The notes: generated by a model from the letters alone, not told the origin. Positions 2,127-37,626 are shown, counted from the first letter of the stretch. The stretch is 64,000 nt of DNA from Octopus sinensis (GCF_006345805.1 NC_043021.1:2480001-2544000); one strand, 5' to 3'. A program made the numbers and translations.

Positions 2127-2280
2127 GTATATTTTTTTTTTAGAAAACAGCAAAATATTCAATACCCACTCAACACACCACACATATACAAACCTACATT
2201 CAAGTGTATTGAATACCTGTAAGTAGAAATATGATATTTATATTTATATAGCATCAACACTTACAGTAAGTATTTGATGC

Positions 2281-2323
<43 letters not shown>

Positions 2324-2513
2324 ATTAGGGAGATAGTAGTGTGCCTGTGTGTGGGCATTATCTGTCAATGAGTAGGACAGGGGTGTGCATGTGTTGATGT
2401 GCTTGATAGCACACCCATTTAATATGGGTGATTATATTGGAATGTAGGACACAACCACTGAGTTTTAGGTGCAGTCCCAGGCAACACATGACACCTCGGT
2501 GCGCCTCTGTGAG

Positions 2514-2640
2514 TCATTCACTCAGACTCAAGATGGCTGCCAGCATGTCTTTCTCCTTGACTCCCGCCTGCACCAAGTCGTCGTTCAACTGGAAAATATG
2601 CACGTCTCCTTCACCGTCACCACTGGCAATAATATTAGGC
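2514..2640 (-). CDS. WDR34: WDR34 exon 12, last coding exon (PNIIASGDGEGDVHIFQL...LSE*)
   Basis: ctcttcag acceptor; TGA at 2514-2516; WD motif ASGDGEGDVHIFQL. Confidence 0.92.
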
Positions 2641-8600: not shown

Positions 8601-9191
8601 TTTGACTGGAACTGCTAAGACGAGGACATCATCATCATCATCTTCGTTTAGCGTCCGCTTTTCATGCTAGCATGGGTTGGACAGTTCAACTGGGAAGCCA
8701 GAAGGCTGCACCAGGCCCAATCTTGATCTGGCAGAGTTTCTACGGCTGGATGCCCTTCCTAACGCCAACCACTCCGTGAGTGTAGTGGGTGCTTTTTACG
8801 TGCCACCGGCACAGGTGCCAGGCGAGACATGCACAAACATATAGACATCTACGTAGCACACCGAATCCACTCATAAAACTTTGGTCGACCTGGGGCTATA
8901 GTAGAACACACTTGGTATCACAAGGTACCACACATTGAGATTGAACCTGGATCATGCAGTTGAGAAGCAAGCTTCTTCCCATACGCCTACTCCAGTGCCT
9001 GTGGGTATACACATACATACACATACACACCTATATATACATACATATGTAAGTGATAACAATAAAGTTTGTACTTACTGTTGGGTAAGGGTCAGTTTGT
9101 TTAACTTCATGTCCACTGTCCAAACCAGAAGTTTGCCATCTCCACTCACACTGACAAGCTGCCAAACAGAGTGATAAACATGACTGTTTTA

Positions 9192-9228
<37 letters not shown>

Positions 9229-12200
9229 TTATCAATATAGGGTAGCAAAAAAATTCAAGAAAAAATTTCTGCCACCAGCGGTCAAGTGAGAAAATAGAAA
9301 TAGTCACAGACTATATAATATATTCAACAAAATATTAAGGAAAGACCCTTACAGGTCATTCGACTCACTTGAAAAGAGCAGCCAAAACTCAAACCGCAAA
9401 AATAGTAGTAATTCTGAAAGGACAAATGTTTTTATTTCTCCTTTAGCTTTCAGAATTACTACTATTTTTGCGGTTTGAGTTTTGGCTGCTCTTTCAAGTG
9501 AGTCGAATGACCTGTAAGGGTCTTTCCTTAATATTTTGTTGTATATATATATATATATACACACAGATGAATATGGTATTTAAGTCATAGGCACCAGAAT
9601 TTTGTATGGTATTATCCATATAAATCCATGGGGTGATTATAATCAAAATAAGCATCAAGTATATCTGAGGTAATTTGGTACAATCGTGTCATGCTACTTC
9701 ATTTTATTAAACATGGTAAGTATTACATCAGTTTTAAAATGTTGAGCAATCTTCAGCCATTTATAGAAGTCTTCCATCAAACGGACAATACATATTCTTA
9801 TTTCCATTTCGTTTGCCAACATTATAAAGAGGGAGGTAAATATACAGACAGAGAGGTTGATTCGATTCTTAAGAACAGGATAGTATTGAAATTTACTCTC
9901 TGACTGTAGATTTTTTCACTAAGTTGCTTATTTTGTATATATACACTCTGTAAAGTGGTTGGCATTAGGAAAGGCCTCCAGTTATAGAAATGAAACCAAA
10001 ACAGACTATGGAACCTGGTACAGCTCTCTGACTTAGCAGTTCCAGTCAAACCGTCCAACTCATGCCAGCATGGAAAACAGACGTCAAATGATGATTATGA
10101 ATCATCATCATCATCATCATCTAATATCCACTTTCCATGCTGGCATGGGTTGGACGGTTTGACCGGAACTGGTAAGCCGCACCAGGTTCCAGTCTGATTC
10201 AGCCCAGTTTCTATGGCTGGATGCCCTTCCTTATGCCCACCAGTTGAATCAGACCCAAATGTTTTACCCATTTTATGTTCAAAGCGGCCGGATCCAGCTT
10301 CTCACACCTACCCTACAATGTCATTCTAAAAAATAAACAATCACATCATCAAAAGCTCAAAGCTACAAGATAATCCAGAATTAATTCAAAACAATACAAT
10401 TGTAAGTATTACATCAGTTTTAAAATGTTGAGCAATCTTCAGCCATTTATAGAAGTCTTCCATCAAACAGACAATACATGGAGTATGCATATATACAAAT
10501 AAATAAGCATGACATATGATAGAGTAATCTGAATGCTTAATGATTAAAGACAGATGAACAAAATGGAGGTTTACCTTGTATGTCTTAGAGTGACTTTCAG
10601 GGTCTAGGACCCATTGTAGCTTAGCAACAGGCTCCCTGTGTGCATCTCCATCTCCCATACCATAACTATCCACGAGTAATACATTGTCATGGCTAAAATC
10701 CCAAAGCATGATTTCACCTGCAAAAGATAGAACGGTTATTTCAGGTAAAGCTCACAAAAGATCAGGTAGATTAATCTTAATATGAATGTCTGAGAGACAA
10801 GTTATCCAAAACCATGAAGGCAATCATCTGAACGGATAGAACACATTTGCATGCGCATATCTAAGTTAAGTTAAGTTAATTTTTTGGCTCAAAAAGCAAA
10901 AAGCAAGGCCATGTAGGGGGACATGGAGTTATGTACAGGGAGGGTGTTCATGCAAAAAGTTCAGGCCATTTCTGGTCAAGAGAGACTTTGAACTGAGCAG
11001 TCATCGGCATCTTCACTATCTCGTCTGGCAGCTTATTCCACGGATCGACAACCCGGACAGAGAAAGCCCCTCTCGTTCGATTGAGATGAAATCGTCGCAG
11101 ATAGAGCTTTTCGGAGTGACCCCGCAGCCAACGCTCTGGAGCAGGAGTGAAGAACAGCTCTTTCGAGAGGTTATACTTTCCACTTATGATGTTGTGAGCA
11201 AGAATGAGATCACCACGGCAGCGGCGTTTTTCTAGAGAATAAATGTTGAGCGTCTTCAGCCTTTCTTCATAAGACAAATTCTTGAGACCAAGAACCATGC
11301 GGGTAGCCAGCTTCTGGACTCTTTCGAGATACTGTATGTCTTTGAGGAGATAAGGAGAAGAGGCTTGAATCCCGTACTCCAATATGGGTCTCACCAGCGT
11401 GACATAGAGCGGTAGGAATATGGCTGCTGTGAGCATTCCGAATGACCGTCGAATCAAGAACAGAACTCCGCACGTGTGTGTGTGTGTGTAGGCACAAGCA
11501 TGGCCATGTGGCAAGATGTTTGCTTCCAAACCATACCATTCAGGGTTCAGTCCCACTGCATAGCACTTGAGTAAGTGTCTTCTGTAGCCTCACGCCAACT
11601 CAAGCCATGGAAGGCGGAAACTGAAAGAAGCCCGTTATGTGTGTGTTTATGTGTATATGCATATATCTGTATTTGTCTCCCACCATCGTTTGACAACCAT
11701 TGTAGTTTATGTGTTTATGTCCTTGTAACTTAGTGGTTCACCAAAAGAGACTGATAGAGTAAGTATGTGGCTTAAAAAAAAAGGGAGTGGATCAATTCAT
11801 GTGACTAAAATTCTTGAAGGTGATACCCCAGCATGGCCACAGTCTAATACCTGTAACAAGTAAAAGATATACACACACACACACACTTTCTCCCATGTAT
11901 CTGGCTCTTTACAAGAGACCAATAGACACAGAGGAATTACGGTGCCAAATACGGAATTGCCATGTGAATTCTTCCCATCTCCCTGTGCTCTAAGTTCAAA
12001 GTTCAAGTACCACCTGAGGTCAATTTTGCTTTTCGTCCTTTCAGGATTGATGAAATAAAGTACCAGTTCCAGGCTGACAGAACCCTTAATTCATTAGCAT
12101 TTAAACTGGCCATATCTAGCCCCAAAATACTCCACCTTGTTTTATATTTAAACTGGCCAGATCCAGCCTCTCACACCTACCCAGTAATGTTATTCTAAAA

Positions 12201-15200
12201 ATACGCAATCACACCATCAAACCCTTGAAGCTATGAGATAATGCAGGATTAATTCAAAACAATGTGGATAAATAAGAATTACTTTTGACAGCCTTCTCGG
12301 GGAAATTTCAAACCTGGTTCTCATTCCTAAGGTATCTTTTCATAATATCATTATTATTATTATTATTATTGTGGAGGCGCAATGGCCCAGTGGTTAGGGC
12401 AGCGGACTCGCGGTCGTAGGATCGCGGTTTCGATTCCCAGACCGGGCGTTGTGAGTGTTTATTGAGCGAAAACACCTAAAAGCTCCATGAGGCTCCGGCA
12501 GGGGATGGTGGTGATCCCTGTTGTACTCTTTCACCACAACTTTCTCTCACTCTTACTTCCTGTTTCTGTTGTACCTGTATTTCAAAGGGCCAGCCTTGTC
12601 ACTCTCTGTGTCACGCTGAATCTCCCAGAGAACTACGTTAAGGGTACACGTGTCTGTGGAGTGCTCAGCCACTTACACGTTAATTTCACGAGCAGGCTGT
12701 TCCTTTGATCGGGTCAACCGGAACCCTCATCGTCGTAACCGACGGAGTGCTTCCATTATTATTATTATTATTATTCAGGTCACTGCTTGGAATCAAACTC
12801 GGAATCTTGGGGTTAGATGCCCGTGCTCTTAACCATTATGCCATATGCCTACAGGCATATAATTATAATTATAATAATAATAATAATAGTAACCTTGAAA
12901 AATACCTTAGGAATGAGAACCCAGGTTCGAAGTTTCCCCAAGATACCTAATGAAGGCCGGAGGGTATATCAGCCGAAACATTGTGTTAACAACAAACAAG
13001 ATGAGGACAAATGACCGTCAAATGTAAATAGCATCTGTTCCGGTCTTTCTCCTGTCGTTACTTACCGTTGAAGTTTCCTGCACACACAAGAGCTGGGTTG
13101 GCTGGGTGGAAGGCAACACACATCAAACAACACGATTGCTCAATGACTTTGCTGGCTTTTTTCGAGTCCAAGGTTTGACTGTCTATATTCCAAGTGCAGA
13201 GGGCAGCTTTGTGCGTACACCAACTGTCATGGTCAAGCCGACCATATCTAGGATCAAGTTAAGGGGATTGTTGAACAACACACTGAAGACCCAACATCAA
13301 GCATCATACATAAAGAATAAGAACAGGCTGTGCAAAGGTTAGAGAGCTTTGTTGGTAACTAAAGGCCTCTCCCTCGGAGTGAAAGACAGATTGTATGATG
13401 CCTGTGTATGTATGGCTATGCTACATGGCAATGAAACATGGGCTTTGACTACAGAGGACTTGTGAAGGCATGAAAGAAACAAAGCTAGCATGCTCTGCTG
13501 GATGGGTAATGTCAATGTGCATATGCGACAGAGTGTAAATTATTTCAGAGGAAAACTGGGAATAAGGGACATCAGATGTTGTGTGCAAGAGGGAAGACTG
13601 TGCTGGTATGGTCATGTGATGCATATGGACGAGGACAGCAGCATCAAGAAGTGCTGATCTCTAATTGTGGAGGGAACCTGTGGAAAGGGGTAGACCCAGG
13701 AAGAAGTGGTGAGAAAGGATCTTTGGACACTGGGCCTCACTGAGGAACTGACAAGGGGCCGGGATATGTGGTGATTTGCTGTACTTGATAAGACGCTTCA
13801 AACTAAATAAAACTACTGTCTTCCACACATACAGGCTTGTCCATTACAGGTGCCGGTGCCACTTAAAAAGCACCCGTGTTGGTGCTGCATAGACGCACCC
13901 ATGCTGGTGGCACATAAATGGCATCTAGCCATAGAAACCACACCTCAACAGACACCTGGAGACTAGACAGCTCTAGGTCAAACTGTCCAACCCATGCCAG
14001 CATAGAAAGCAGACATTAAACAATGATGATAGAGCAATTATCATTATGAAAGGTGGCGAACTGGCAGAAACGTTAGCACGCCGGGTGAAATGCGTAGCCA
14101 TATTTCGTCTGCCGTTGCGTTCTGAGTTCAACTTTGCCTTTCATCCTTTTGGGGTTGATTAAATAAGTACCAGTTACGAACTGGGGTTGATATAATCGAC
14201 TTCATCCGTTTGTCTGTCCTTGTTTGTCCCCTCTGTTTAGCCACTTGTAGGTAGTAAAGAAATAAGAATCGTTAGCATGTCAGGCAAAATGCTTGGCAGC
14301 ATTTCTTGTGGTTTTACATTCTGAGTTCAAATACAACCAGGGTCAATTTTTGCCTTTTGTCCTGTTGGGGTTCGATATAAATAAGTACCAGTTGAACACT
14401 GGGGTCCATGTAATCAACTTACCCAACTCCCATGAAATTGTTAGCCTAGTGCCAACATTTGAAACCATTATTATTATTATTGTTTTTGTTGCTGTTGTTA
14501 TTTAAGACGTCACACAGCATCCAATATCCTGATCTTGTTGATTGAAGATATTGTGGCTACTGGGAGAGTGTGATCGTTGCCAGAACAGCCAATGGTTTCC
14601 GTACCCGTGGCACGTAAAAGGGCACCATTCGAGCGTGATCATTACCAACGTCGCTTCACTGGCACCTGTGCTGGTGGCACGTGTAAAAAGATTCGAGCAA
14701 GATCATTGCCAGTACCGCCTGATTGGCCCCTGTGCCGATGGCACGTAAAAAGCACCCACTACATTCTCGGAGTGGTTGGCATTAGGAAGGGTATCCAGCT
14801 GTAGAAACTCTGCCAGATCAAGATTGGAGCCTGGTGCAGCCATCTGGTTCGCCAGCCCTCAGTCAAAATCGTCCAACCCATGCTAGCATGGAAAGCAGAC
14901 GTTAAACGATGATGATGATGAAACTTTGTACTTGTCGGTCAAGTCACAACAAGGACCTCAGATTGACAGTACTTTATTGCAATATGCATGCAGTTCCAGG
15001 TAATGCCGATTTATGCAATACACCTGTATTGGAGGGTGTTTCTAAAGTTTCCAGATGTTTCTTCATCTTGGGTGGTATTGAACCCACTGCTCCTATGACA
15101 ACAGGGACACTCTTTATGTTTGACTCATGTAGCTGACACATCTTGACAATCTCAATTCTCAGGTCTCCATATTTATCAACCTTTTCTCTTTCTATTATTA

Positions 15201-16025
15201 TTATTAGTAGTAGTAGTAGTAGTAGTATAGGCGTAGGAGTGGCTGTGTGGTAAGTAGCTTGCTTATGAACCACATGGTTCCGGGTTCAGTCCCAGTGCGT
15301 GGCACCTGGGGCAAGTGTCTTCTACTATAGCCTCGGGCCGACCAAAACTTTGTGAGTGGATTTGGTAGACGGAAACTGAAAGAAGCCCGTCATATATATG
15401 TATATATATATATGTACGTGTGTGTGTTTGTGTGTCTGTGTTTGTCCCCCTAGCATTGCTTGACAACCGATGCTGGTGTGTTTACGTCCCCGTCACTTAG
15501 CGGTTCGGCAAAAGAGACCGATGGAATAAGTACTGGGCTTACAAAAGAATAAGTCCCGGGGTCGAGTTGCTCGATTAGAGGCGGTGCTCCAGCATGGCCG
15601 CAGTCAAATGACTGAAACAAGTAAAAGAAGGAAAAGAGTAAAGAGTAGCAGCAGCAGTTGTAGTGATGATGGTGGTGGTGGGTTTGGCGGTAGCAGTAAG
15701 GGAATGAAAGGAAGGAGGCGGAGAAGATGTAGCTTTTTTCATTTTTGTTTTGTTTTGTTTGTTTTTTTTCTAGATGTTGTATGTTTATATCTACGAAACC
15801 AAAACAAACAAGGCTTGTTTGTCACAGCTGAAATGGCATCGATTGTGTGTGTCAGCTTTTTTAGGAGAACAGAGCCATAACATTCAAACCACCACACACA
15901 CACAGACACACAGACAGACAATATTATTTTTTAAAAAGAGGAAGAAACATTAAATGATGTACTCAAAACATGAAAAGAAGAAGAAGAAGAAGAAAAAGAA
16001 AGAAGAAAAAGAAGGAGGAGGAGGA

Positions 16026-16058
<33 letters not shown>

Positions 16059-19000
16059 GGAAGAGGAGGAGGAAGAAGAAGAGGAGGAAGAGGAGGAAGA
16101 AGGAGGAGGAAGAAAGGAAGGAGAAGAAGAGGATGAGGAGGAAGAAGAAGAAGAGGTGGATGAGGAGGAAGAAAAGGAGGAGGAGAAGAAGAGGAGGATG
16201 AGAAAAAGAAAGAAGAAAAGGAAGAAGAAGAAGAAAAGCAGTATCTAAATTGAGATAGTCATGGCTGGAAAAAAAAAAAAACCCAGACAAATCAATGAAA
16301 AATGAACCCAGAAAAATTAGTGAGGTGTTAAACTCTTCCCCCCTACCACAGTTAACAGTTGTGAACATGAGACAGGAGGAATGTGTCAAAAAAATGTGGG
16401 AATAGCCTCATAAACAGCGAAGAAGACATAATATTTCAAGTTGACATTTACAGTTTAATATATTTGTCTGACTATAAATAGAAACTACTTCGTGCAGACA
16501 CAGTTATATGGCTACACCTATATTGACTCAGGCAGACACCTGTACAAGATATTGTACTTTGTTCCAATAATAGCCAGCTACAGTCAGCTGTACTTTATTT
16601 CAAGGACATCCAAGCCCCACTTATGTGCCTTGCTACTTACTGTACTTTATATACCAATAATAACATCCGGTCTTTGCTGAGTCACTCAGGCATTAGAAGT
16701 TATCTGACATTCCACAAGCAAACAAGGGGGGGCTCACCTGCTAGAAATAGAAGCCAAATCTCACTCAAACACTTTGGGTGAAGCAGTCTTGGCTTTACCG
16801 AAACATGAAAACGTCAGGCCGCAATGCTCTTAACCCTTTTGTAACCACATTTCTGTTGAAATTAATCATTTTTTTGTTTTAATTAATTTCTTAAATTATG
16901 AAGAAGTTAATAAAATTAGTTTGTTGTAATTAAGCTGTTTTTTGGAACATAAATTAACATGAGAATCTGACGGAAGATTTTAATTTAATTCGTGTCCATA
17001 CAACCAGGTGAGGTGGTCAGAGATGGATTGGTATGAAAAGAGTTAACCATAGGCACTAACTTTCGGCAAAACAACAAGTACAATCTATTCATTAGACTTA
17101 ATTCCATAGGCCCCACCCCACCCCACTTTGATGCTTCAAGTGTATTTGAAACCCCTATTTCCTGTCAATCGACCGCCAATAAAACATCCATGATGTCACT
17201 GGGGTACACAATATTCAATTCAATCATCAGTCAACGTCTGTTGTCCATGCTTTGGACAGTTTTACCAGACAGACAAACGGATTAAGTCGATTACATCGAC
17301 CCCAGCGCATAACTGGTACTTATTTTATCAACCCTGAAAGGATGAAAGGCAAAGTCGACCACGGTGTAATTTGAACTCAGAACGCAGCGGAAGACGAAAT
17401 ACCGCAAAGCATTTCGCCCGGCGTGCTAACGGTTCTGCCAGCTCACCACCTTCTCCAATATATTAAGAAGTTTTAAGTATCCTCTGTTGCCCCCAAGGGG
17501 GGTGGTTACTGTCCATGGGAGGGTAAATGTCCTAGACTCAAAGAGGAAGTGGCCACTCTAAACAGCCCACATTTCCTGCACTATGGAACCAAACTGCTAC
17601 ATGTTAACCATTCATTTATTAATATTTCCATAACACAGTTACATGCACATACATGTGTGAATATTGTAATAAATGCAGGGGGTGGGATAGGGGGTAACTG
17701 AGTGGATATGTTCCTGCCAGGTGAAAAACGGGCCTCATGTGAATTTATACAGGTGACTGTCACAAAGGCATAAAAACCCACACACACGGGGAGGGGGATG
17801 ACGAGGAGAGGAAAGAGTGAGAAACAGAAAAGAGGAAGACAAGCATGAAGAAAGACATGCAGAGAGAGAGGGGGAGAGAGAGGATGAGAAAAGGAAATAA
17901 ATTGCTGATATAAAAAGAAAGACAGTAAGAATAAGAAACAAGGAGGGAGGGAGGGAGGGAGAAAGAGAGAGGAAGCGGGGAGGTGATAGAAGGGAATAGA
18001 TAGGAAGAGAGAGAGAGAGAAAGAGGTAAAGTAAACAATGAGAATCTTCCTTTAAAATGGGATTGCGTGGCACTGCACTGACACTACGTGGCACTCTTAC
18101 ATGACACTGCACTGACACTACATGGCACTCTTACATGACACTGCACTGACACTACGTGGCACTCTTACATGACACTGGACTGACACTACGTGGCACTCTT
18201 ACATGACACTGGACTGACACTACATGGCACTCTTACATGACACTGGACTGACACTACGTGGCACTCTTACATGACACTGGACTGACACTACATGGCACTC
18301 TTACATGACACTGGACTGACACTACGTGGCACTCTTACATGACACTGCACTGACACTACGTGGCACTCTTACATGACACTGGACTGACACTACATGGCAC
18401 TCTTACATGACACTACGTAGCACTCTTACATGACACTGGACTGACACTACGTAGCACTCTTACATGACACTGGACTGACACTACGTGGCACTCTTACATG
18501 ACACTGGACTGACACTACGTGGCACTCTTACATGACACTGGACTGACACTACGTGGCACTCTTACATGACACTGCACTGACACTACATGGCACTCTTACA
18601 TGACACTGGACTGACACTACGTGGCACTCTTACATGACACTGGACTGACACTACATGGCACTCTTACATGACACTACGTGGCACTCTTACATGACACTGG
18701 ACTGACACTACGTGGCACTCTTACATGACACTGGACTGACACTATGTGGCACTCTTACATGACACTACGTGGCACTCTTACATGACACTGGACTGACACT
18801 ACATGGCACTCTTACATGACACTGGACTGACACTACATGGCACTCTTACATGACACTGCACTGACACTACGTGGCACTCTTACATGACACTGCACTGACA
18901 CTACGTGGAACTCTTACATGACACTGCACTGACACTACATGGCACTGCACTGACACTACATGGCACTCTTACATGACACTGCACTGATGCTACGTAGTAC

Positions 19001-22000
19001 TGCACTGGCACTCTTATGTGGTACTGCACTGTCACTCTTACGTGACACTGCACTGGCACTCTTATGTGGTACTGCACTGGCACTCTTACGTGACACTGCA
19101 CTGGCACTCTTATGTGGTACTGCACTGGCACTCTTACGTGGCACTGCACGAGCACTCTTACGTGGCACTGCACTGGCACTCTTACGTGGCACTGCACTGG
19201 CACTCTTACGTGGCACTGCACTGGCACTCTTACATGACACTGCACTGGCACTCTTATGTGGTACTGCACTGGCACTCTTACGTGGCACTGCACTGGCACT
19301 CTTACATGACATTGCACTGGCACTCTTACGTGGTACTGCACTGGCACTCTTACGTGACACTGCACTGGCACTCTTATGTGGTACTGCACTGGCACTCTTA
19401 CGTGACACTGCACTGGCACTCTTATGTGGTACTGCACTGGCACTCTTACGTGACACTGCACTGGCACTCTTATGTGGCACTGCACTGGCACTCTTACGTG
19501 GCACTGCACTGGCACTCTTACATGACATTGCACTGTCACTCTTACGTGACACTGCACTGGCACTCTTACGTGACACTGCACTGGCACTCTTATGTGGTAC
19601 TGCACTGGCACTCTTACGTGACACTGCACTGGCACTCTTATGTGGTACTGCACTGGCACTCTTACGTGACACTGCACTGGCACTCTTATGTGGTACTGCA
19701 CTGGCACTCTTACATGACACTGCACTGGCACTCTTATGTGGCACTGCACTGGCACTCTTACGTGGCACTGCACTGGCACTCTTACATGACATTGCACTGT
19801 CACTCTTACGTGACACTGCACTGACACTCTTACGTGACACTGCACTGGCACTCTTATGTGGTACTGCACTGGCACTCTTACGTGACACTGCACTGGCACT
19901 CTTATGTGGTACTGCACTGGCACTCTTACGTGACACTGCACTGGCACTCTTATGTGGCACTGCACTGGCACTCTTACGTGGCACTGCACTGGCACTCTTA
20001 CATGACATTGCACTGTCACTCTTACGTGACACTGCACTGGCACTCTTACGTGACACTGCACTGGCACTCTTATGTGGTACTGCACTGGCACTCTTACGTG
20101 ACACTGCACTGGCACTCTTATGTGGTACTGCACTGGCACTCTTACATGACACTGCACTGGCACTCTTACGTGACACTGCACTGGCACTCTTACGTGGCAC
20201 TGCACTGGCACTCTTATGTGGTACTGCACTGGCACTCTTACATGACACTGCACTGGCACTCTTATGTGGTACTGCACTGGCACTCTTACATGACACTGCA
20301 CTGGCACTCTTATGTGGTACTGCACTGGCACTCTTACATGACACTGCACTGGCACTCTTATGTGGTACTGCACTGGCACTCTTACATGACACTGCACTGG
20401 CACTCTTATGTGGTACTGCACTGGCACTCTTACATGACACTGCACTGGCACTCTTACGTGGCACTGCACTGGCACTCTTACATGACACTGCACTGGCACT
20501 CTTATGTGGTACTGCACTGGCACTCTTATGTGGTACTGCACTGGCACTCTTACGTGACACTGCACTGGCACTCTTATGTGGTACTGCACTGGCACTCTTA
20601 CGTGACACTGCACTGGCACTCTTATGTGGCACTGCACTGGCACTCTTATGTGGTACTGCACTGGCACTCTTACGTGACACTGCACTGGCACTCTTATGTG
20701 GCACTGCACTGGCACTCTTATGTGGTACTGCACTGGCACTCTTACGTGACACTGCACTGGCACTCTTACGTGGCCCTGCAATCACATCATGAAAATCTCA
20801 AAGCTACAAGACAATACCTGATTAGTTCAGAGACATGGCTGCACGGATAAGGAGTCTGCTTCACAGACTTGAGGTAACGGGTTCAATTTCAAGGCGGTGA
20901 GCTGGCAGAAACGTTAGCACGCCGGGCTAAATGCTTAGCAGTATTTCGTCTGCCACTACGTTCTGAGTTCAAATTCCGCTGAGGTCGACTTTGCCTTTCA
21001 TCCTTTCGGGGTCGATAGAGTAAGTACCAGTTACACACTGGGGTCGATGTAATCGACTTAATCCATTTGTCTGTCCTTGTGTGTCCCCTCTGTGTTTAGC
21101 CCCTTGAGGGTAGTAAAGAAATAGGTTCAATTTCAATGTATAACAACCTTGGGCAAGTATCTTCCTCAATAAAATACAGGAGGATTTAGGTAAAATTACC
21201 TAGGGACATGCTCTGCGCAGTATGTTTCAGTCATTAGACTGTAGCTATGCATGTTGAAGACAGTGACTTTCATGTTTCGACCAGCTGAGCTATCGTCAGA
21301 CTTCAATGCATTCGAGTTAGAATTGCCTTCATATTGTCTCTGTTGAGTTAGAAACATGTTTGGGAGTGTGGGCTTGAGTGAGGTGGTAATTAAGTAGTAA
21401 TTAAGTTGTACAGTGGGTTGTTATGGACAAGTGTTTTGGAGAAATTTTTATCGATTAAATTTGGGGTTATGTTCACCATTATCATCGTCGTTTAACGTCC
21501 GCTTTCCATGCTGGCATGAGTTGGATGGTTTGACTGAGGGCTGACAAGCAAGAAGGCTGCACCAGGCTCCAATCTGATCTGGCAAAGTTTCTACAGCTGG
21601 ATGCCCTTCCTGATACCAACCACCCTGAAAGTGTAGTGGGTGCTTTCTACATGCCATCGACGACACCATGACACGGGTGCCAATCAGGTGGTATTGTCAT
21701 CGGGCCACAACAACGATTTCACTTGCCTCAACAGTTCTTCTCAAGCACAGTTTATTGCCCAATGATCAAAGGGTACTCTTAAATGGGCCTGTAATGCTAC
21801 ACTGGCATAGGCCCAGATTAGGGTCTCACTTGGCTTGCCAGGTCTTCTCAAGCACAGCATTTCTCCAAAGGTTATTGTTTAGAATTTATTCATGCATGAA
21901 GAACTTTGTAAACAAGCCTGAAGGTGTTCCTCTTTTGTTAGGTAGGCAAAAGGTGTGAGGGATTTTTGTTACTTTTGGCATCATTGGATTTAATACTCTT

Positions 22001-25000
22001 AAATCAAATCAAATCAAATCAAACCAAATCAAAATAGATGAACATCAATGGAATTTGTATCCTTGTGGTACCAGTGCCGGTGGCACATAAGAAAACCATC
22101 CGAGCATGACCGTAGCCAGTACCGCATCGACTGGCCTCCGTGCTGAGGGCACGTAACAAACACCATCCGAGCATGGCCGTTCGCCAGCCTCGTCTGGCAC
22201 CTGTGTCGGTGGCACATAAAAACACCATCCGAGAGTGGCCGTCTGCCAGCCTCGTCTGGCACCTGTGTCGGTGGCACATAAAATCACCCACTACACTCTC
22301 GGAGTGGTTGGCGTTAGGAAGGGCATCCAGCTGTAGAAACACTGCCAGATCTGACTGGCCTGGTGCAGCCTTCGAGCTTGCCAGACCTCAGTTGAACCGT
22401 CCAACCCATGCTAGCATGGAAAGCAGACGTTAAACGATGATGATGATGATGTTTTCACAAAGTCCATTATTTAAGCCAGGAGCAAATGGGTGTGTCAGCT
22501 TTTTTAACACAAAAGAATGCAGTTTGGGATGGTCATTTCTTTACTTCTTGTTATTTAGGGTACTTCTTTCCATTTGTTATTACTCAAGGCATGTTATGGC
22601 TTTGCAATACAGAGAGTCGTTTCTCTTGTGCTTTGATGTTCACAAAGTAAAGGTTGTATGTTTACATGTTTCTCTTCAGGTATTCATTGGTTTACAGGTA
22701 ATTTTATTAGTAGGTAGGGACTATCACCTTCCTGTTTTGTGGCGGTGGAGTTCGTTTGATGTTTGTTTATAAAGTTTCTTTCTTCAAATTCTGTTCTAGA
22801 TATATGCTAAAGTAGGCCTGATACAGATGGCCTATTTTCTCTCTTTTACTTGTTTCAGTCATTTGACTGTGGCCATGCTGGAGCACCGCCTTTAGTCGAG
22901 CAACTCGACCCCGGGACTTATTCTTTTGTAAGCCCAGTACTTATTCTATCGGTCTCTTTTGCCGAACCGCTAAGTAATGGGGACATAAACACACCAGCAT
23001 TGGTTGTCTGGGGGGACAAACAAAGACACACAAACATGCACACACACACATATATATATATATATATACATATATACGACAGGCTTCTTTCAGTTTCTGC
23101 CTACCAAATCCACTCACAAGGCTTTGGTTGGCCCAAGGCTATAGTAGAAGATACTTGCCCAAGGTGCTACGCAGTGGGACTGAACCTGGAACCATGTGGT
23201 TGGTAAACAAGCTACTTACCACACAGCCACTCCTATACTACTTACCACATTGCCACGCCTATTTGTATATTTGTGAGTAAAAATGGGAACAAAAATATTA
23301 TGATATAATTTTTTTTTTTAATGGTAAAAAAAAAAGAATTTTTTCAGTTTGCTTGCTTACAAGAATACACTTTAAGAGTGCTTTTTCATCATCACCATCA
23401 TCATGATTACAAGAAAGTTCACCATGAGGGAAGTTCAGCATGAGGAAAACCACCAGACATGATCCTCATTTAACGCCAGTTTTTCATGCTAACATGGGTC
23501 AGACAGTTTGAATGGAACTGGTAAGCCGGAGAACAGCACCAGGTTCCAGTTTGATTCTGGCTTGGTTTCTACGGCTGGATGTCCTTCCTAATGCCAACCA
23601 CCCCAAAAGTGTACTGCGTGCTTTTACACAGCACCGGTACAGGTGCTTTTTACATGGCAGCAGCAACCATGAGCCAGCAAGATTAATTCTAGTACTTATT
23701 CTGTCAGTCTCTTTTGCTGAACTGCTAAGTTATGGGGATGTAAACAGACCAATACCAGTTGTGAAGTCTTTGTGAGTGACAAACACAACAAAAAGACACA
23801 TATACACAAATACACTCTCAAAGACTCCTTGTCTTGCAAAGTTACTTGGTGACCCCCACCAGTGCTGGTGCCACTTAAAAAGCATCCAGTCCACACTGTG
23901 AAGTGGTTGGCATTTGGAAGGCCCTTCCAGCTGTAAAAACCTTGCTGAAACTGATCTCGCCTGTGCTGGTGCCACATAAAAACCACTCAGTTCATTCTGT
24001 AGAGTGGTTGATGCCAGGAAGGACATCCAGCCATAAAATTAGGGAGTCTGGTGCAGACTTCTACCTGGCCAGCTCCTGTCAAACTGTCCAACCCATGCCA
24101 GCATGGAAGGCAAACGTTAAATGATGATGACGATGATGCATGTATGAAAGGCTTCTTTCGGTTTCCATCTATCAAATTCACTCACAAAGCTTTGATCAGC
24201 TCAGGGCTATAATACAAAGCCACTCGGCCCAATGTGCTATGCTGTAGGACCGAACTCAGAACCACGCAATTGGGAAGCAGACAATAATACCTGATCATAG
24301 AGAGTAAAACTAAATCCATTGCCTATTGTAAGACCACTCGCTGTCTCGTCCCTTGAAGCAGTGGGGTGGGTGTTTACCTGTCGTAAGATCTCAGGTGCTA
24401 GCTTCAGTCTGAGACGAACTCAATACCTTGAAGTGCCGCACAAACCTAAAAGTCAGGATCTTTTCATCCCAGCTCCCAGTCTTCAGAAAAGAAAAAAAAA
24501 AAAGGATACGATGCTGCAATGACGGAACCAGAAGAATTCCATGACAAACCAGTCACCTGGCACTGAAAAGACACAAAAAAAAAATGAGAGATCATTACAC
24601 ATAGGTATATACATGTTTCAAGAGAAGGAGGAGGAGAAGGTGATGGTGGGAGCAGTAGTAGTAGAGTCTAACACTGATCAGGCAGGCTTTTAATGAAGGG
24701 TTCTCCAACCATGACCTTTCCATATATTTCCAATTTTCCGAGACTTACATTATCTAATGGGTCCTTTCCTTATTTAAGACAATGAAGAGGGCACAGTCCT
24801 TGGTTTGTGTCAAGAAGAAGTGGTGGTGGTGGTGGTTTTGTTTTAGTAATTAGATCCATACACTCTAATTTCAGGTTAAAGCCCAGGTAGATACATACAT
24901 GCACACACACACAGGTGTTAGGTTGAATCCCTGCCAATGTAGCCCCTGGGGCTCAGTACAGTCGTCTGGCTCATCAGTTTCTGCTGAACCATCCAATCCC

Positions 25001-26050
25001 TGTCAGCATTAAAGACAGACATTAAATGATGACGACGACGATGATGATGATGTATATGTTTACATTCCGAGCCACAAATGGCGACATCTGTTGGCATGTG
25101 CTTTTGAACATGAGTGGAATGAAAATTCCCTTAATTGGAAAAAGGGCAAGGGTTAGCGAGAGGAAGAGCATCCACCTTCTGTCCATCATATGTATTTGCC
25201 AAAGCCAGGGAGCAATCAACATCATCATCGTTTAACGTCCGTTTTCCCGCGCTAGCACAGGTTGGACGGTTCGACCGGGGATCTGGGAAGCCAGAAGGCT
25301 GCACCAGGCTCCAGTCTGTTCTGGCAGTGTTTCTACAGCTGGATGCCCTTCCTAACGCCAACCACTCCGTGAGTGTAGTGGGTGCTTTTTACGTGCCACC
25401 GGCACAGGTGCCAGGGGAGTCTGGCATCGGCGACGATCGGTTGGTGCTTTTAATGAATACGTAAATAAATGGATGCAAAAGCACAATTGAGGGCACATCT
25501 TCAGAGAAACAATATTGATTAGTCAAGAGTTACAATTAAGATAACGACACTTGATAACAGAAAGGATTGGCAAAAATAAACAAACAATAAAAAAAACTCA
25601 CTTAAATATTGGTTTCAAATTCTGGCACAAGGCCAGCAATTTCAAGGGAGGGAGATGAGTCGATTACATCAACCCCAGTACACAACTGGTACTTAATTTA
25701 TCGACTCTGAAAGGATGAAAGGAAAAGTCAAACCTCGGTGGAATTTGAACTCAGAACAACATACAGACAGACGAAATGCCACTGAGCGTTTTTGTATCGC
25801 GTACTAACGATTCTGCCACCGCAATTAAGATAACGATACTTGATAACAGTAAGGTTTGGCAAAAATGAAAAAAAAAAAACGAAAAAAAAAACATAAAGAA
25901 TAAAACTCACTTAAAAAATTATATTGACACATCTAAATTGTAGAAGGAGATTACAAGGAGTTTTTCAGACTTCTCAATGATAAATCTTATCTTCAAATTC
26001 CCAACCGCAGTCTTAACTAGCAACAGACTACTACAGTTACAACAATAATA

Positions 26051-26081
<31 letters not shown>

Positions 26082-26322
26082 TCTATTCTTTGTTGATTTA
26101 CGGGGTGAGCGCGAACGCAGACCCCCACACTTAGAAATAGCGCACCCGAGTCGCCCACGGTTGGGGCGATCGCAAAGGTCAACCCCCACCGTAGTGCAAT
26201 GGAAGGGCCTCACTCTGGGAGAACCACCTTGCTGACATCATCATCAGCAGCAGCACCGCCACCACCACCACCAGGTTGTTGTGAATCGAGCTTTTCAACC
26301 ACACAATCACAACTGCACCAAT

Positions 26323-26360
<38 letters not shown>

Positions 26361-29300
26361 GAGGGTCTGGGGAAAAGAAAATTCAGGAGGATCAGTTAAT
26401 TATGATTTTAATCAACATATTCCCCTCTCAGATTCACACACTTATTGCAGCAGTCCTTCAGTTCTTTTAAGCCCTGTAAAAAAACTCAGAAGGTCGGGGC
26501 TCCAACCAGGCCTTTTGTGATACCCTAAAAGCCAGGAACTTGTCAGCACCCTCTTGTACATATGCACCTGGATATAGAAAATCAGGCACAGGAGGACAAC
26601 AAAGGAACATGCAAAAAAAAAATAGGAAAAAAACACGAAGGATATGGACCTGCTCATCCATCATCAGTTACTGACCAAAAATCATTACAATTTCGACACC
26701 TTATTGATAAATTTGGCAATATATCAACAGCAAAATACTGTTAGGATATAAGAGAGTAAACATGAATAAATCAAGTACAAGGAAACGTACAAAAGAAACA
26801 AGGTTTCTAGTAGGCCGAACAGTAATAAGGATAAATTATGATTTGATTAAAGTTTATAAACGCTTACCTGGCCCCTAACTGCATCATGTGTGAAAACATG
26901 CAGCTTATTGACTGATGATGACTCGTCTTGCCAACTGACTTGGTAACCTGCAACATTCAGAAGAGAATACTGAGAAACTGAAAGGAATCATAGAAATCTA
27001 ACCACACTGTAGTTAAGACACCCGTGCTGGTGACACGTAAAAAGCACCGTCCGAACGTGGCAGATGCCAGCAGTGCCTGGCTGGCATCCGTGTTGGTGAC
27101 ATGTAAAAAGTACTGGCCGAACGTGGCCGATGCCAGCGCCGCCTGGCTTGCGTCCGTGTTGGTGACACGTAAAAAGCACTGGCCGAACGTGGCAGATGCC
27201 AGCGCTGCCTGGCTGGCATCCATGTTGGTGACATGTAAAAAGTACTGGCCGAACGTGGCCGATGCCAGCGCCGCCTGGCTGGCGTCCGTGTTGGTGACAC
27301 GTAAAAAGCACTGGCCGAACGTGGCAGATGCCAGCAGTGCCTGGCTGGCATCCGTGTTGGTGACATGTAAAAAGTACTGGCCGAACGTGGCCGATGCCAG
27401 CGCCGCCTGGCTGGCGTCCGTGTTGGTGACACGTAAAAAGCACTGGCCGAACGTGGCAGATGCCAGCGCTGCCTGGCTGGCGTCCGTGTTGGTGACACGT
27501 AAAAAGCACTGGCCGAACGTGGCAGATGCCAGCACCGCCTGGCTGGCATCTGTGTCGGTGACACGTAAAAGCACCAACCAATCGTGGTCGTTTGCCAGCC
27601 TGCTCTGGCTCCAGTGCCGGTGGCGCGAAAGAAACACCCACTACACTCATGGAGTGGTTGGGCGTTAGGAAGGGCATCCAGCTCTAGAAACACTGCTAAA
27701 TCAGACTAGAGCTTGGTGCAGCCTCCATGGCTTCCAGATCCCAGTCGAACCATCCAACCCATGTTAGCATGGAAAACGGACATTAAATGATGATGATGAA
27801 TGCTATCTAACATTCAATAGCAAGCATCCGTGCCCTCAAAATGGTGCTGTTAACCCAGATTGCTGAAGAATTAACAGCACCATTTTGCACTGTTAACAGT
27901 TGCTGTTATCAAAGGCACCCAGTTTACTCTGTTATGTGGCTGGTGTTAAGAAAGGACATCAAACTGTAGAAACTAGATGCCAAAAGAGTTATAGAACATG
28001 GCTCAGTCCTCTGGATTATCAGTTCTTGTCAAACCATCCAAACCATCCCAGCATGGAAAATAAAAAGGACGTTCGGTGGTGTTAATGTTGCTTTCCATTT
28101 CCATCAACGAAAAACCAATCAGAAGACTAAAGTAGAAAACATTTTGGCACAAAGTATCCTTCAGTCATTCAGACTGGAACAATTATTCCAATAATTGGCC
28201 AAAGACTTGTTTTCTATATCATCATCATCATCATCGTCGTTTAACGTCCGCTTTCCATGCTAGCATGGGTTGGACGGTTCAACTGGGGTCTGGGAAGCCC
28301 GAAGGCTGCACCAGGCTCCAGTCAGATCTGGCAGAAGTGACTAGGGGCATCATGTGGTTTGGAGCCCCGTGCTACCTGAAACTATGTGCTTGGGAAACAA
28401 ACTTCTCCATCACATAGCCCACCCCGGCAACTAACTGGATTAAGAAATCCACTGATTAAAATTAACAAATCAACTGGGATAACCAGTCGTGTGATGCAAT
28501 GAAGAATGGTAAATGGAATCCGGACTAACCTTGAAATGCTTGGCTTCTGGCATTTTTGTCCAGTTCTTTGTACACAAGTGGTTCCATCTTCTTGAGGAAT
28601 GCTGCCAACTGAGGGGAGTCATCTTTCATAATTACCATTGGTACCGCTGAGTTGTTTGTGGTCTGACTCTGTACATTTAAATAACCAAACATTGAAGAAT
28701 CACAATGACGTAGAGGATAATCATTATCATCATCATCATCATTTAACATCTGCTTTCCATGCTGGCATGGGTTGGATGGTTTGACAGGAACCAATGTGCC
28801 ACAAGGCCACATCAAGCTCCAGTGTCGCCTTTGGCATGGCTTCTAGTGCCGAATGCCCACCTTTATGCCAACCCCTATACAATATGTACTGAGTGCCTTT
28901 ATCATGCCACCAGCACTGGAGGGGTTGCCAAACAACTGCCAAGACAGGAGAGAAGAAAGGCGGGGAAAAAGGGGACAAGGGACTAAGTGGGGAGGGGGGG
29001 TATTTGAGGTGGAGATGAGATTTTATTTTATGCCAAGGACTAGCAGAGGTGGTTTGCTATGGAGAAGATGCATGGCTATCCTGCATTTATATAAGGGTGG
29101 GATGGCGTATCTGGGGGGAAAAAAGGCAAGATGGTAGGAATGGCTTGACAAAGTAAAACCATGAGGATACAAGAGATGACCTCTAGTATCAGAGAACATT
29201 GTAACGTCCCCTTTTCCATGCTTGCAGGGGTTGGATGGAGTTTATTGAGACAGATTTTCTATACAACTTGATGCCCTTTCCAGTTGCCAACCTCCACCTT

Positions 29301-29583
29301 ATTTCCCCCGTGAAAGATTGGAAAGAAAAGACACCACTTCTACGACGGTGATATCAAGACAAGGAGACACACGCACACACACACATACTCTTTTACTTGT
29401 TTCAGTCATTTGACAGCGGCCATGCTGGAGCACCGCCTTTAGTCGAGCAAATCGACCCCGGGACTTATTCTTTGTAAGCCCAGTACTTATTCTATCGGTC
29501 TCTTTTTGCCGAACCGCTAAGTGACGGGGACGTAAACACACCAGCATCGGTTGTCAAGCAATGCTAGGGGGATAAACACAGAC

Positions 29584-29614
<31 letters not shown>

Positions 29615-34927: not shown

Positions 34928-34967
<40 letters not shown>

Positions 34968-36476: not shown

Positions 36477-37323
<847 letters not shown>

Positions 37324-37407
37324 ATGGAGGACATCCAAGCACGTGTTCAGAATGCTGTGAATTCTATGATCACACAATTAGATCAAGAATGCCTTAGAAA
37401 GATGCAG
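37324..37407 (+). CDS. FAM136A: FAM136A exon 1
   Basis: gagATGG start in strong Kozak context; CAG|GTATTG donor. Confidence 0.92.
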
Positions 37408-37626
37408 GTATTGTTTGTTCTTTATGGATTTTGTGATATAAATGCGGAAAATCGAAACATTTTTAGTTGAATGAATAAATGAAAAAATATATAGAGAGAG
37501 ATAGAGATGAAACGAAAAGAGGAATTCTGAATATTTGGAATTTAAACCATTCTTTTAATAGAGATTTCTTGTAATTTATAAATAATTATAGAATTTATAG
37601 ATGGTTCGTTCGGTTGAGTGAACGTG

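What the first reader, a model, noticed from the sequence alone, without database searches (positions are those of the whole stretch)
13248..24509. An 11.3-kb minor-spliceosome (U12) intron in WDR34, packed with transposons and satellites
Seen: donor TC|GTATCCTTT, branch site CCCCTTAAC about 10-12 nt before TAG, no polypyrimidine tract, and a frame that closes correctly (IAAS-YGRLDH). Established: RTATCCTTT and CCTTAAC are the U11 and U12 recognition signals, and such introns are rare and often rate-limiting. Inference: a dynein-2 (ciliary retrograde transport) subunit depends on minor splicing across a very long intron holding RTE, R4-like, SINE, MITE and 2.7-kb satellite insertions, which is a good natural test of how U11/U12 pair over distance.
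Basis: partly seen in the sequence, partly recalled or inferred. Interest (0 to 1): 0.72.

Follow-up and report, generated by a model that had tools for sequence, protein, structure and literature searches.

The report
Long minor-spliceosome intron in octopus dynein gene
The 11.3-kb stretch is a genuine U12-type (minor-spliceosome) intron in the Octopus sinensis ciliary dynein-2 gene WDR34/DYNC2I2; it is an ancient intron swollen by repeats, and a correct but fairly ordinary example of a well-known intron class.

Summary
Window 24509..13248 is intron 5 of 11 in a 12-exon gene. Its 512-aa product is identical to XP_029651092.1, WDR34 (DYNC2I2) of Octopus sinensis.

The intron starts atc|GTATCCTTT. 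It carries CCTTAAC with the branch A 12 nt from the terminal AG, and it closes the frame (VIAAS|YGRLDH) without a gap against human WDR34. Its donor has the worst U2-type match of the gene's 11 introns (4/9).

An intron at exactly this codon and phase has U12-type signals in:
- Argonauta;
- a chiton, a bivalve and two gastropods;
- a sea anemone;
- about 20 unidentified eukaryotic contigs from metagenomes.

These introns have GT-AG, AT-AC, AT-AG or AT-AA ends. Donor positions +2 to +5 and +7 are invariant in 27 distinct introns, and conservation vanishes from +10.

The octopus copy is 11,262 nt, against 94-2,655 nt elsewhere. About 64% of it is SINEs, a LINE fragment and a 2.7-kb satellite. 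A bat and a hummingbird have only a U2-type intron 9 nt downstream. A chytrid has a U2-type intron at the same site.

Dependence on the minor spliceosome is predicted, not shown. Long U12 introns are common and O. sinensis minor introns have already been surveyed, so novelty is modest.

The parts
2514..36521 (-). DYNC2I2 (WDR34) coding region: 12 exons, 512 aa. E1 36521-36418, E2 30669-30585, E3 28668-28530, E4 26947-26868, E5 24562-24510, E6 13247-13066, E7 10717-10575, E8 9158-9079, E9 8328-8138, E10 7603-7458, E11 6242-6034, E12 2640-2514 (TGA).
   Evidence: Spliced model built from tblastn against orthologues and from the splice sites. Its translation is identical over its whole length to XP_029651092.1, WDR34 isoform X1 of Octopus sinensis.
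13248..24509 (-). Intron 5 of 11. It is 11,262 nt, phase 2, with GT-AG ends, and is predicted to be U12-type.
   Evidence: It has the lowest U2-type donor match of the 11 introns in the gene (4/9).
24501..24509 (-). U12-type 5' splice site GTATCCTTT (9/9 match to RTATCCTTT), followed by a T run.
   Evidence: Positions +2..+5 and +7 are invariant, and +8 and +9 are at least 93% conserved, in 27 distinct orthologous introns. No conservation remains from +10.
13258..13266 (-). Branch-point sequence CCCCTTAAC (core CCTTAAC at 13264-13258). The predicted branch A is 13259, at -12 (alternatively 13260, at -13).
   Evidence: The octopus-Argonauta alignment of the 3' side (13264..13066) starts at 13264, the first base of this motif.
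13248..13250 (-). 3' splice site TAG|A.
24510..24562 (-). Exon 5 (53 nt, CQVTGLSWNSSGSVIAAS). It is preceded by a strong U2-type acceptor (T-rich tract, then CAG).
13066..13247 (-). Exon 6 (182 nt, YGRLDH...AGNFNG). It is followed by a consensus U2-type donor, acg|GTAAGT.
18066..20780 (.). Tandem satellite of about 2.7 kb. The basic period is 24 nt, with higher-order periods of 34, 48 and 72. Identity is 84-93%.
   Evidence: TRF; the repeat finder shows 24-nt spacing.
15975..16235 (.). (AAG)n / purine-rich microsatellite.
   Evidence: TRF.
13314..13794 (+). 3' fragment of a non-LTR (LINE) retrotransposon, antisense to the gene and 50 nt upstream of the branch site.
   Evidence: It is 72% identical to 50313-49817, the 3' end of the reverse-transcriptase ORF at 50122-51525(-) (RVT_1, E = 3e-32). 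The peptides match (LLVTKGLSL.VK.RLYDACV...). The clade (RTE) was not testable.
15226..15651 (+). tRNA-derived SINE of about 410 nt. Its head carries a B-box-like GGTTCCGGGTTCAGTCCC, and it has an internal TA/TG microsatellite.
   Evidence: At least 12 copies at 82-92% identity in the 64-kb window; sequence.
22832..23237 (-). Second copy of the same SINE in the opposite orientation. The two copies form an inverted pair of about 400 nt lying 7.2 kb apart.
   Evidence: the repeat finder I1/I2, 89-94% complementary.
14575..14925 (+). Second SINE family of about 350 nt, with an internal 62-nt repeat and a tail ...CGTTAAACGATGATGATG. More copies or fragments lie in the intron at 13904-14487, 21457-21699, 22023-22454, 23458-23646 and 23857-24264.
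   Evidence: 34 hits in the window; coverage map. One copy also sits in the 666-nt Argonauta intron.
17268..17463 (.). Interspersed repeat with an inverted partner at 20885-21126. The pair brackets the satellite.
   Evidence: the repeat finder I3, 185 nt, 89% complementary; up to 14 copies in the window.

Best explanation
Window 24509..13248 (minus strand) is intron 5 of the Octopus sinensis gene for cytoplasmic dynein-2 intermediate chain 2 (DYNC2I2, formerly WDR34). It is a GT-AG intron of the U12 type.

Predicted mechanism (established for the class, inferred here):
1. The U11/U12 di-snRNP recognises the rigid 5' splice site GTATCCTTT (U11) and the branch sequence CCTTAAC (U12, bulging the A at -12).
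2. U4atac/U6atac.U5 joins, and U6atac replaces U11 at the 5' splice site.
3. The 3' AG is chosen by its 12-nt distance from the branch point, not by a U2AF-bound pyrimidine tract.
4. Pairing of the two ends across 11 kb is most likely helped by exon definition. The 53-nt exon 5 has a strong U2-type acceptor upstream, and exon 6 ends in a consensus GTAAGT donor.

The intron is ancient. The same codon and phase carry a U12-type intron in a cnidarian and throughout molluscs.

Its length is a lineage-specific accident. It is 666 nt in the octopod Argonauta. In Octopus it was inflated about 17-fold by SINE and LINE insertions and a 2.7-kb satellite. Only the two splice signals remain conserved.
For: Shown here:
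- Exact donor, branch site, spacing and frame.
- The model equals RefSeq XP_029651092.1. The same junction is present in every annotated Octopus isoform and in cephalopod transcript-length assemblies.
- The joined peptide aligns without a gap to human WDR34.
- The donor matches the U2 consensus at only 4/9 positions, the worst of 11 introns. The other ten are GTRAGT-like.
- Orthologous introns at the identical position:
  - Argonauta: GTATCCTTT...TTCCTTAAC...CAG.
  - Liolophura: ATATCCTTT...CCTTAAC...TAG.
  - Gigantopelta and Biomphalaria: ATATCCTTT...AC.
  - Actinia: ATATCCTTT...TTCCTTGAC...AA.
  - Solemya: GTATCTTTT...TCTTAAC...TAG.

- 20 further distinct introns come from metagenome-derived eukaryotic contigs.
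- AT-AC, AT-AG and AT-AA ends cannot be handled as ordinary U2-type introns.
- In each invertebrate locus whose intron has the RTATCCTT donor form (Solemya's GTATCTTTT is not matched), RTATCCTT on the sense strand occurs essentially only at this exon edge.
- Between Octopus and Argonauta, only the exons, the 5'ss and the region from the branch site onward align uniquely.
- Repeat content.

From the literature: O. sinensis is one of the species in a pan-eukaryotic minor-intron survey, and molluscs are relatively rich in minor introns (PMC10639083).
Against: - There is no RNA evidence from this species in hand. The junction rests on a gene model, although that model is identical to RefSeq's.
- Dependence on U11, U12, U4atac and U6atac was not tested.
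- No minor snRNA gene lies in the window. The Rfam scan found only a U1-like sequence.
- Absence of a pyrimidine tract is not clear-cut.
- The exact length depends on correct assembly of a 2.7-kb satellite.
Confidence: 0.9

Rival explanations
1. It is an ordinary U2-type GT-AG intron with a weak donor, removed by the major spliceosome. On this view the resemblance to U12 signals is fortuitous.
For: The ends are GT-AG. The pyrimidine content before the 3' end (0.70) is within the range of the gene's U2-type introns. The donor 9-mer occurs at about chance frequency in the window.
Against: - The donor matches MAG|GTRAGT at only 4/9 positions.
- TATC[CT]TT at +2..+8 is essentially invariant in 27 orthologous introns, while the bases beyond +9 are free.
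- Orthologues have AT-AC, AT-AG and AT-AA ends.
- The branch motif sits 10-15 nt from the 3' end in all of the named species.
Confidence: 0.04
2. The junction or the intron length is an artefact. Either a small exon or a different splice pair lies inside the 11 kb, or the satellite and repeats are mis-assembled so that the true intron is much shorter or longer.
For: The intron holds a 2.7-kb array of 24-nt units and many near-identical SINE copies. Such sequence is the kind that assemblers collapse or expand. No reads were available.
Against: - The joined exons align without a gap to orthologues from human to sea anemone.
- The full model is identical to the RefSeq protein.
- No fragment in the intron resembles DYNC2I2 in tblastn with 150 homologues.
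- An error in array length would change the size but not the intron type.
Confidence: 0.06

Closest known systems
Canonical animal U12-type GT-AG introns. Examples are the minor introns of the human ciliary genes IFT80, TMEM107 and TCTN1 (PMC9992838).
   Same: The 5'ss is /GTATCCTTT. The branch sequence is TCCTTAAC-like and lies 10-15 nt from the AG. The phase is non-zero. It is a single minor intron in an otherwise U2-type, intron-rich, old gene. The host gene works in cilia, a class that is over-represented among human U12 genes.
   Different: The host gene is not known as a minor-intron gene in vertebrates. No paper links WDR34 or DYNC2I2 with minor introns. The two amniote genes examined contain no RTATCCTT donor at all.
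The orthologous U12-type intron of DYNC2I2 in other invertebrates: Argonauta hians, Liolophura sinensis, Solemya velum, Gigantopelta aegis, Biomphalaria glabrata and Actinia tenebrosa.
   Same: The position is identical (second base of the codon before Y of YGR, phase 2). The donor core and the branch motif are the same.
   Different: - Length is 11,262 nt, against 375-2,655 nt.
- Terminal dinucleotides differ between lineages: GT-AG in cephalopods and Solemya, AT-AC in the two gastropods, AT-AG in the chiton, AT-AA in the anemone. This is the subtype switching already described for minor introns.
- Solemya and 11 of the 20 distinct metagenome introns have GTATCTTTT.
The U2-type intron of vertebrate DYNC2I2 at YGR|LDD (Pteropus vampyrus, Calypte anna), and the U2-type intron of the chytrid Zopfochytrium polystomum at VGVA|YGA.
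   Same: The region of the protein and the phase (2) are the same. The chytrid intron is at exactly the same position.
   Different: - The donor is GTGAGT, and the vertebrate introns end in a pyrimidine tract followed by CAG.
- The vertebrate intron lies 9 nt downstream.
- Neither has any U12 signal.

Membership tests
U12-type (minor-spliceosome) intron | 5' splice site /RTATCCTTT directly at the exon edge | tested here: met
   atc|GTATCCTTT, 9/9, at 24509-24501.
U12-type (minor-spliceosome) intron | Branch-point sequence TCCTTRAY | tested here: met
   CCCCTTAAC. The core CCTTAAC matches 7/7, but the base before it is C instead of T.
U12-type (minor-spliceosome) intron | Short, fixed distance from branch A to 3' splice site (about 10-15 nt) | tested here: met
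   The A at 13259 is 12 nt from the last intron base. The distance is 10-15 nt in the six named orthologues.
U12-type (minor-spliceosome) intron | No extended polypyrimidine tract before the 3' splice site | tested here: inconclusive
   Pyrimidine fraction over -23..-4 is 0.70, against 0.55-0.95 in the other ten introns. Intron 5 has the fewest U's and its longest pyrimidine run is 7, but it overlaps the weaker U2-type introns.
U12-type (minor-spliceosome) intron | Poor fit to the U2-type donor consensus MAG|GTRAGT | tested here: met
   4/9 matches, the lowest of the 11 introns. The others score 5-8/9.
U12-type (minor-spliceosome) intron | Orthologous introns keep the U12 signals, including AT-AC subtypes | tested here: met
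   Six named species plus 20 distinct metagenome-derived introns. The donor core is invariant, and the ends are GT-AG, AT-AC, AT-AG or AT-AA.
U12-type (minor-spliceosome) intron | The organism has a working minor spliceosome | not tested
   No minor snRNA gene is in the window. Larue & Roy 2023 list Octopus sinensis among minor-intron-containing species and call molluscs relatively enriched.
U12-type (minor-spliceosome) intron | Removal requires U11, U12, U4atac and U6atac | not testable with these tools
   This needs knock-down, minigene or RNA-seq experiments.
DYNC2I2 / WDR34 (dynein-2 intermediate chain 2) | Full-length orthology to characterised DYNC2I2 | tested here: met
   - The 512-aa model is identical to XP_029651092.1.
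- The 79-aa junction peptide hits human WDR34 in the dynein-2 structures 6rlb/6sc2/8rgg at E = 9e-22. The next hits are unrelated WD40 proteins at E > 0.008.
- Profile hits are named DYNC2I2/WDR34 from cnidarians to mammals.

The most novel reading that the evidence does not exclude
This intron position dates back to the common ancestor of animals and fungi. It stayed U12-type in cnidarians, molluscs and many other invertebrates, and was converted in place to U2-type in a chytrid. In vertebrates it was converted to U2-type and also slid 9 nt downstream in the same phase. That would be a concrete case of minor-to-major conversion coupled to intron sliding, an event that current surveys treat as 'at most very rare' and score as loss (PMC10639083).
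Probability: 0.2. Interest if true: 0.55.

Novelty: new member of a known kind. Interest (0 to 1): 0.3.

Why it matters
- It adds the dynein-2 intermediate chain to the ciliary genes that carry a minor intron, but only outside vertebrates. Links between minor splicing and cilia drawn from human gene lists therefore do not transfer one-to-one to invertebrates.
- It shows cleanly how little of a U12 intron is constrained. Across a 17-fold expansion since the Octopus/Argonauta split, only 9 nt at the 5' end and the branch-to-AG segment stay aligned.
- It offers a convenient set for minigene work: 27 natural variants of one intron, with GT-AG, AT-AC, AT-AG and AT-AA ends and the donors GTATCCTTT and GTATCTTTT.
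- It does not open a new question about the mechanism of minor splicing. Long minor introns are routine in large genomes.

Tried and rejected
- The search for homologous proteins with the 79-aa junction peptide found nothing, because of the word-index limit. The representative search and alignment queries then worked.
- The second minus-strand RTATCCTTY, at 26645, lies inside intron 4 and away from any exon, so it was rejected as chance.
The LINE fragment was instead tied to an RVT_1 ORF elsewhere in the window by nucleotide and peptide similarity.
- The 'RTE', 'R4-like' and 'MITE' labels could not be checked, because no eukaryotic repeat library was available.
- ARAGORN found no tRNA genes, although one SINE has a tRNA-like head.
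- The search for related loci with the 62-sequence alignment failed for lack of a conserved stretch. A trimmed exon-6 alignment worked.
- The look-up of encoding contigs had no record for the O. vulgaris protein or the caecilian protein. L010 is intronless and uninformative.
- The supplementary gene lists of two minor-intron papers are not held, so human DYNC2I2's absence from minor-intron lists rests on full-text searches and on two amniote genomes.
- I considered that the inverted SINE pair (about 400 nt, 7.2 kb apart) might shorten the effective intron by RNA pairing. I set this aside as non-specific, because the same SINE occurs at least 12 times in both orientations across the window.
Full report
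**What is there**

The feature lies on the minus strand. Reading downward from window 24562:
- Exon 5 (53 nt) encodes CQVTGLSWNSSGSVIAAS and ends ...GCA GCA TC.
- The next bases are GTATCCTTT followed by a T run (24509-24501).
- At the other end the intron reads ...CAACAATCCCCTTAACTTGATCCTAG.
- Exon 6 then begins A TAT GGT CGG CTT GAC CAT.

The serine codon is completed and the frame runs on as YGRLDHDSWCTHK.... The intron is 24509..13248, 11,262 nt, phase 2.

The joined 79-aa peptide aligns without a gap to residues 163-240 of human WDR34 (DYNC2I2) in the dynein-2 structures 6rlb, 6sc2 and 8rgg (E = 9e-22). The next hits are unrelated WD40 proteins at E > 0.008.

**Gene model and source organism**

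I used homologues from the representative search and tblastn to assemble a 12-exon model spanning 36521 to 2514. Its 512-aa product is identical, end to end, to XP_029651092.1, 'WD repeat-containing protein 34 isoform X1 [Octopus sinensis]'. It differs at a few residues from the O. vulgaris protein.

The junction ...SVIAAS[Y/F]GR[L/F]DH is present in:
- all annotated isoforms of O. sinensis, O. vulgaris and O. bimaculoides;
- transcript-length assemblies of other cephalopods (clusters of P0165 and P0166, one of which contains Sepia pharaonis WDR34).

**Is it U12-type?**

The candidate is intron 5 of 11.
- The other ten introns start GTAAGT, GTAAGC, GTTAGT, GTAAAC, GTCAGT, GTAACG or GTTAAT, and end in YAG after mostly T-rich tracts.
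- Intron 5 has the poorest match to MAG|GTRAGT (4/9, against 5-8/9).
- It is a perfect 9/9 match to RTATCCTTT.
- Its branch motif CCTTAAC (13264-13258) puts the second A 12 nt from the 3' end, inside the narrow window typical of the class.

The motif alone is not significant. RTATCCTTY occurs three times in the two strands of the window, with about two expected, and the other minus-strand copy (26645) lies inside intron 4. What is significant is the combination of three things: a full donor consensus exactly at the exon edge, a branch consensus at the right distance from the AG, and closure of the frame. From base composition I estimate about 5e-8 per GT-AG intron.

The pyrimidine fraction before the 3' end is 0.70, within the range of the gene's weaker U2-type introns, although the intron has the fewest U's and no long run.

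**Comparative test**

Genomic loci were fetched for orthologues. An intron sits at exactly the same codon position and phase in all six invertebrates examined, and all six carry U12 signals:

| Species | Group | Donor | Branch motif | 3' end | Length (nt) |
|---|---|---|---|---|---|
| Argonauta hians | octopod | GTATCCTTT | TTCCTTAAC | CAG | 666 |
| Liolophura sinensis | chiton | ATATCCTTT | CCTTAAC | TAG | 410 |
| Gigantopelta aegis | gastropod | ATATCCTTT | CCTTAAC | AC | 823 |
| Biomphalaria glabrata | gastropod | ATATCCTTT | TTCCTTAAT | AC | 648 |
| Solemya velum | bivalve | GTATCTTTT | TCTTAAC | TAG | 2,655 |
| Actinia tenebrosa | sea anemone | ATATCCTTT | TTCCTTGAC | AA | 375 |

AT-AA is reported as the commonest non-canonical minor-intron ending (PMC10639083).

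A scan of metagenome assemblies with the exon-6 peptide returned 43 eukaryotic contigs of unknown origin that carry this gene.
- Most have a CCTTRAY- or TCTTAAC-like motif about 10-14 nt before the AG at the same exon start.
- In 23 contigs the upstream exon was also found with a U12-like donor at its edge. Ten donors are GTATCCT-type (nine match RTATCCTT; L020 is GTATCCTAT), and 13 are GTATCTTTT.
- Outside that set, one contig (L050) has a 76-nt GTAACC intron, apparently U2-like, at the same site.
- Two contigs (L011, L023) have no intron there.

Over 27 distinct orthologous introns:
- donor positions +2 to +5 and +7 are invariant;
- +8 and +9 are at least 93% conserved;
- +1 is G or A, and +6 is C or T;
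- from +10 onward no position exceeds 63%.

In each named invertebrate locus except Solemya, whose donor is GTATCTTTT, the sense-strand string RTATCCTT occurs essentially only at this exon edge. It is absent from the vertebrate and chytrid genes. This pattern is what selection on U11/U6atac and U12 pairing predicts. It is hard to reconcile with a U2-type intron.

**Outside the invertebrates**

In a bat (Pteropus vampyrus) and a hummingbird (Calypte anna) there is no intron at this site. A U2-type intron (ccg|GTGAGT ... pyrimidine tract CAG|G) lies 9 nt downstream, in the same phase, at YGR|LDD.

The chytrid Zopfochytrium polystomum has a 65-nt U2-type intron (ggc|GTGAGT...CCAG|G) at exactly the invertebrate position.

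Minor-to-major conversion is the accepted direction of change (PMC10639083). The simplest reading is therefore an old U12 intron that was retained in cnidarians and molluscs and converted or replaced elsewhere.

Whether the vertebrate intron is the same intron after sliding cannot be decided here. The next intron downstream is also offset by about four codons between octopus and bat, so vertebrate intron positions differ in this region generally. No fish or invertebrate deuterostome locus could be fetched.

Full-text searches found no paper connecting WDR34 or DYNC2I2 with minor introns. That fits with the gene not being a minor-intron gene in mammals.

**Content and history of the intron**

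About 64% of the intron either has further copies within this 64-kb window or is a tandem array. The identifiable pieces are:
- A 2.7-kb satellite with a 24-nt base period (18066-20780).
- A purine-rich microsatellite (15975-16235).
- A 3' fragment of a LINE at 13314-13794 on the plus strand, only 50 nt from the branch site. It is related to a reverse-transcriptase ORF at 50122-51525 (RVT_1, E = 3e-32).
- Two copies, in opposite orientation, of a roughly 410-nt SINE with a tRNA-like head (15226-15651 and 22832-23237). This SINE has at least 12 copies in the window.
- Several copies of a second SINE of about 350 nt, which gives 34 hits in the window.

The labels 'RTE', 'R4-like' and 'MITE' could not be tested.

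Aligning exon 5, the intron and exon 6 of Argonauta against Octopus gives unique matches only for the exons, the first 9 intron bases, and the segment starting at the first base of CCTTAAC. The only other matches come from one SINE copy and low-complexity repeats.

The intron has therefore grown about 17-fold in the Octopus lineage through repeat insertion, and only the two splice signals are held fixed. It is the longest intron in the gene (the others are 534-5,748 nt). It is more than four times longer than any of the 26 other orthologous introns seen (94-2,655 nt).

**How it most likely works**

The steps below are established for the class and inferred here.
1. The U11/U12 di-snRNP binds the 5' splice site and branch sequence cooperatively.
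2. U4atac/U6atac.U5 replaces U11.
3. The AG 12 nt downstream of the branch A is used.

Across 11 kb, the initial pairing is probably set up by exon definition. The 53-nt exon 5 is preceded by a T-rich U2-type acceptor, and exon 6 ends in a consensus GTAAGT.

The inverted SINE pair could in principle loop out 7.2 kb of pre-mRNA. Because this SINE is everywhere in both orientations, I give that no specific weight.

**Novelty and interest**

U12-type introns are a textbook class.
- O. sinensis was one of the species in the 3,000-genome minor-intron survey, and molluscs are noted there as relatively rich in them.
- Minor-intron length tracks major-intron length across species, so a long minor intron in a repeat-rich cephalopod genome is expected.
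- Cilium genes are already known to be over-represented among human U12 genes (PMC9992838).

What appears to be undescribed is that DYNC2I2 itself carries a deeply conserved minor intron in invertebrates that amniotes lack.

I rate this a correct call, a new member of a known kind, and of modest interest (0.3). Confidence in the U12-type assignment is 0.9. Functional dependence on the minor spliceosome and any regulatory retention remain untested.

Noticed in passing
window 26100-26282 (-), inside intron 4 of the same gene: An Rfam U1 snRNA match (83 bits, gathering threshold 69.5) on the gene's own strand. The 5' end reads ACAACCTGG instead of ACTTACCTG, and a GGT/GCT/GAT microsatellite lies within the 5' part of the match. 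It looks like a U1-derived pseudogene or variant rather than a working gene.
   Followed up: partly
window ~37321-37410 (+): The first coding exon of a DUF842-family (PF05811) gene lies head-to-head about 0.8 kb from the DYNC2I2 start codon (36521, -). The same divergent neighbour is called in the Argonauta, Liolophura, Solemya and Gigantopelta loci. This is a conserved gene pair, and it probably shares a bidirectional promoter.
   Followed up: partly
L007 (Pteropus) ~13410-13935 and L008 (Calypte) ~2166-3365: The two amniotes lack the U12 intron. They have a U2-type GTGAGT...CAG intron 9 nt downstream in the same phase (YGR|LDD). It is a candidate for conversion plus sliding, or for loss and gain. 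The next intron downstream is also offset by about 4 codons.
   Followed up: partly
L009 (Zopfochytrium polystomum) 1029-1093: A chytrid fungus has a 65-nt U2-type intron (GTGAGT...CAG) at exactly the invertebrate U12 position and phase. This suggests that the intron position predates the animal-fungal split.
   Followed up: partly
L004 (Solemya), and 13 metagenome contigs carrying 11 distinct introns (L013, L029, L032-L039, L045, L047, L048): A recurrent donor variant, GTATCTTTT (+6 C to T), often occurs together with a TCTTAAC or CTTTAAC branch motif instead of CCTTAAC. It is unclear whether this reflects shared ancestry or a tolerated variant of the signals.
   Followed up: no
L011, L023 and L050 (metagenome contigs): Two contigs have no intron at the site: the coding sequence is continuous across VIAAS/YGR. 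One contig has a 76-nt GTAACC...GCAG intron there. These look like independent loss and probable conversion events in unidentified eukaryotes.
   Followed up: no
window 50122-51525 (-): A 467-aa open reading frame of a LINE carries a reverse-transcriptase domain (RVT_1, E = 3e-32) and a sub-threshold PHD-like zinc finger. The intron's LINE fragment belongs to a related family (72% nucleotide identity).
   Followed up: partly
window-wide, e.g. 1716-2126, 29389-29789, 32561-32947, 41064-41483, 42633-43042, 52264-52659, 61481-61883: A roughly 410-nt tRNA-derived SINE is present at least 12 times in 64 kb at 82-92% identity, in both orientations. A second SINE of about 350 nt gives 34 hits, and its internal 62-nt unit forms arrays at about 45.8-47.0 kb.
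   Followed up: partly
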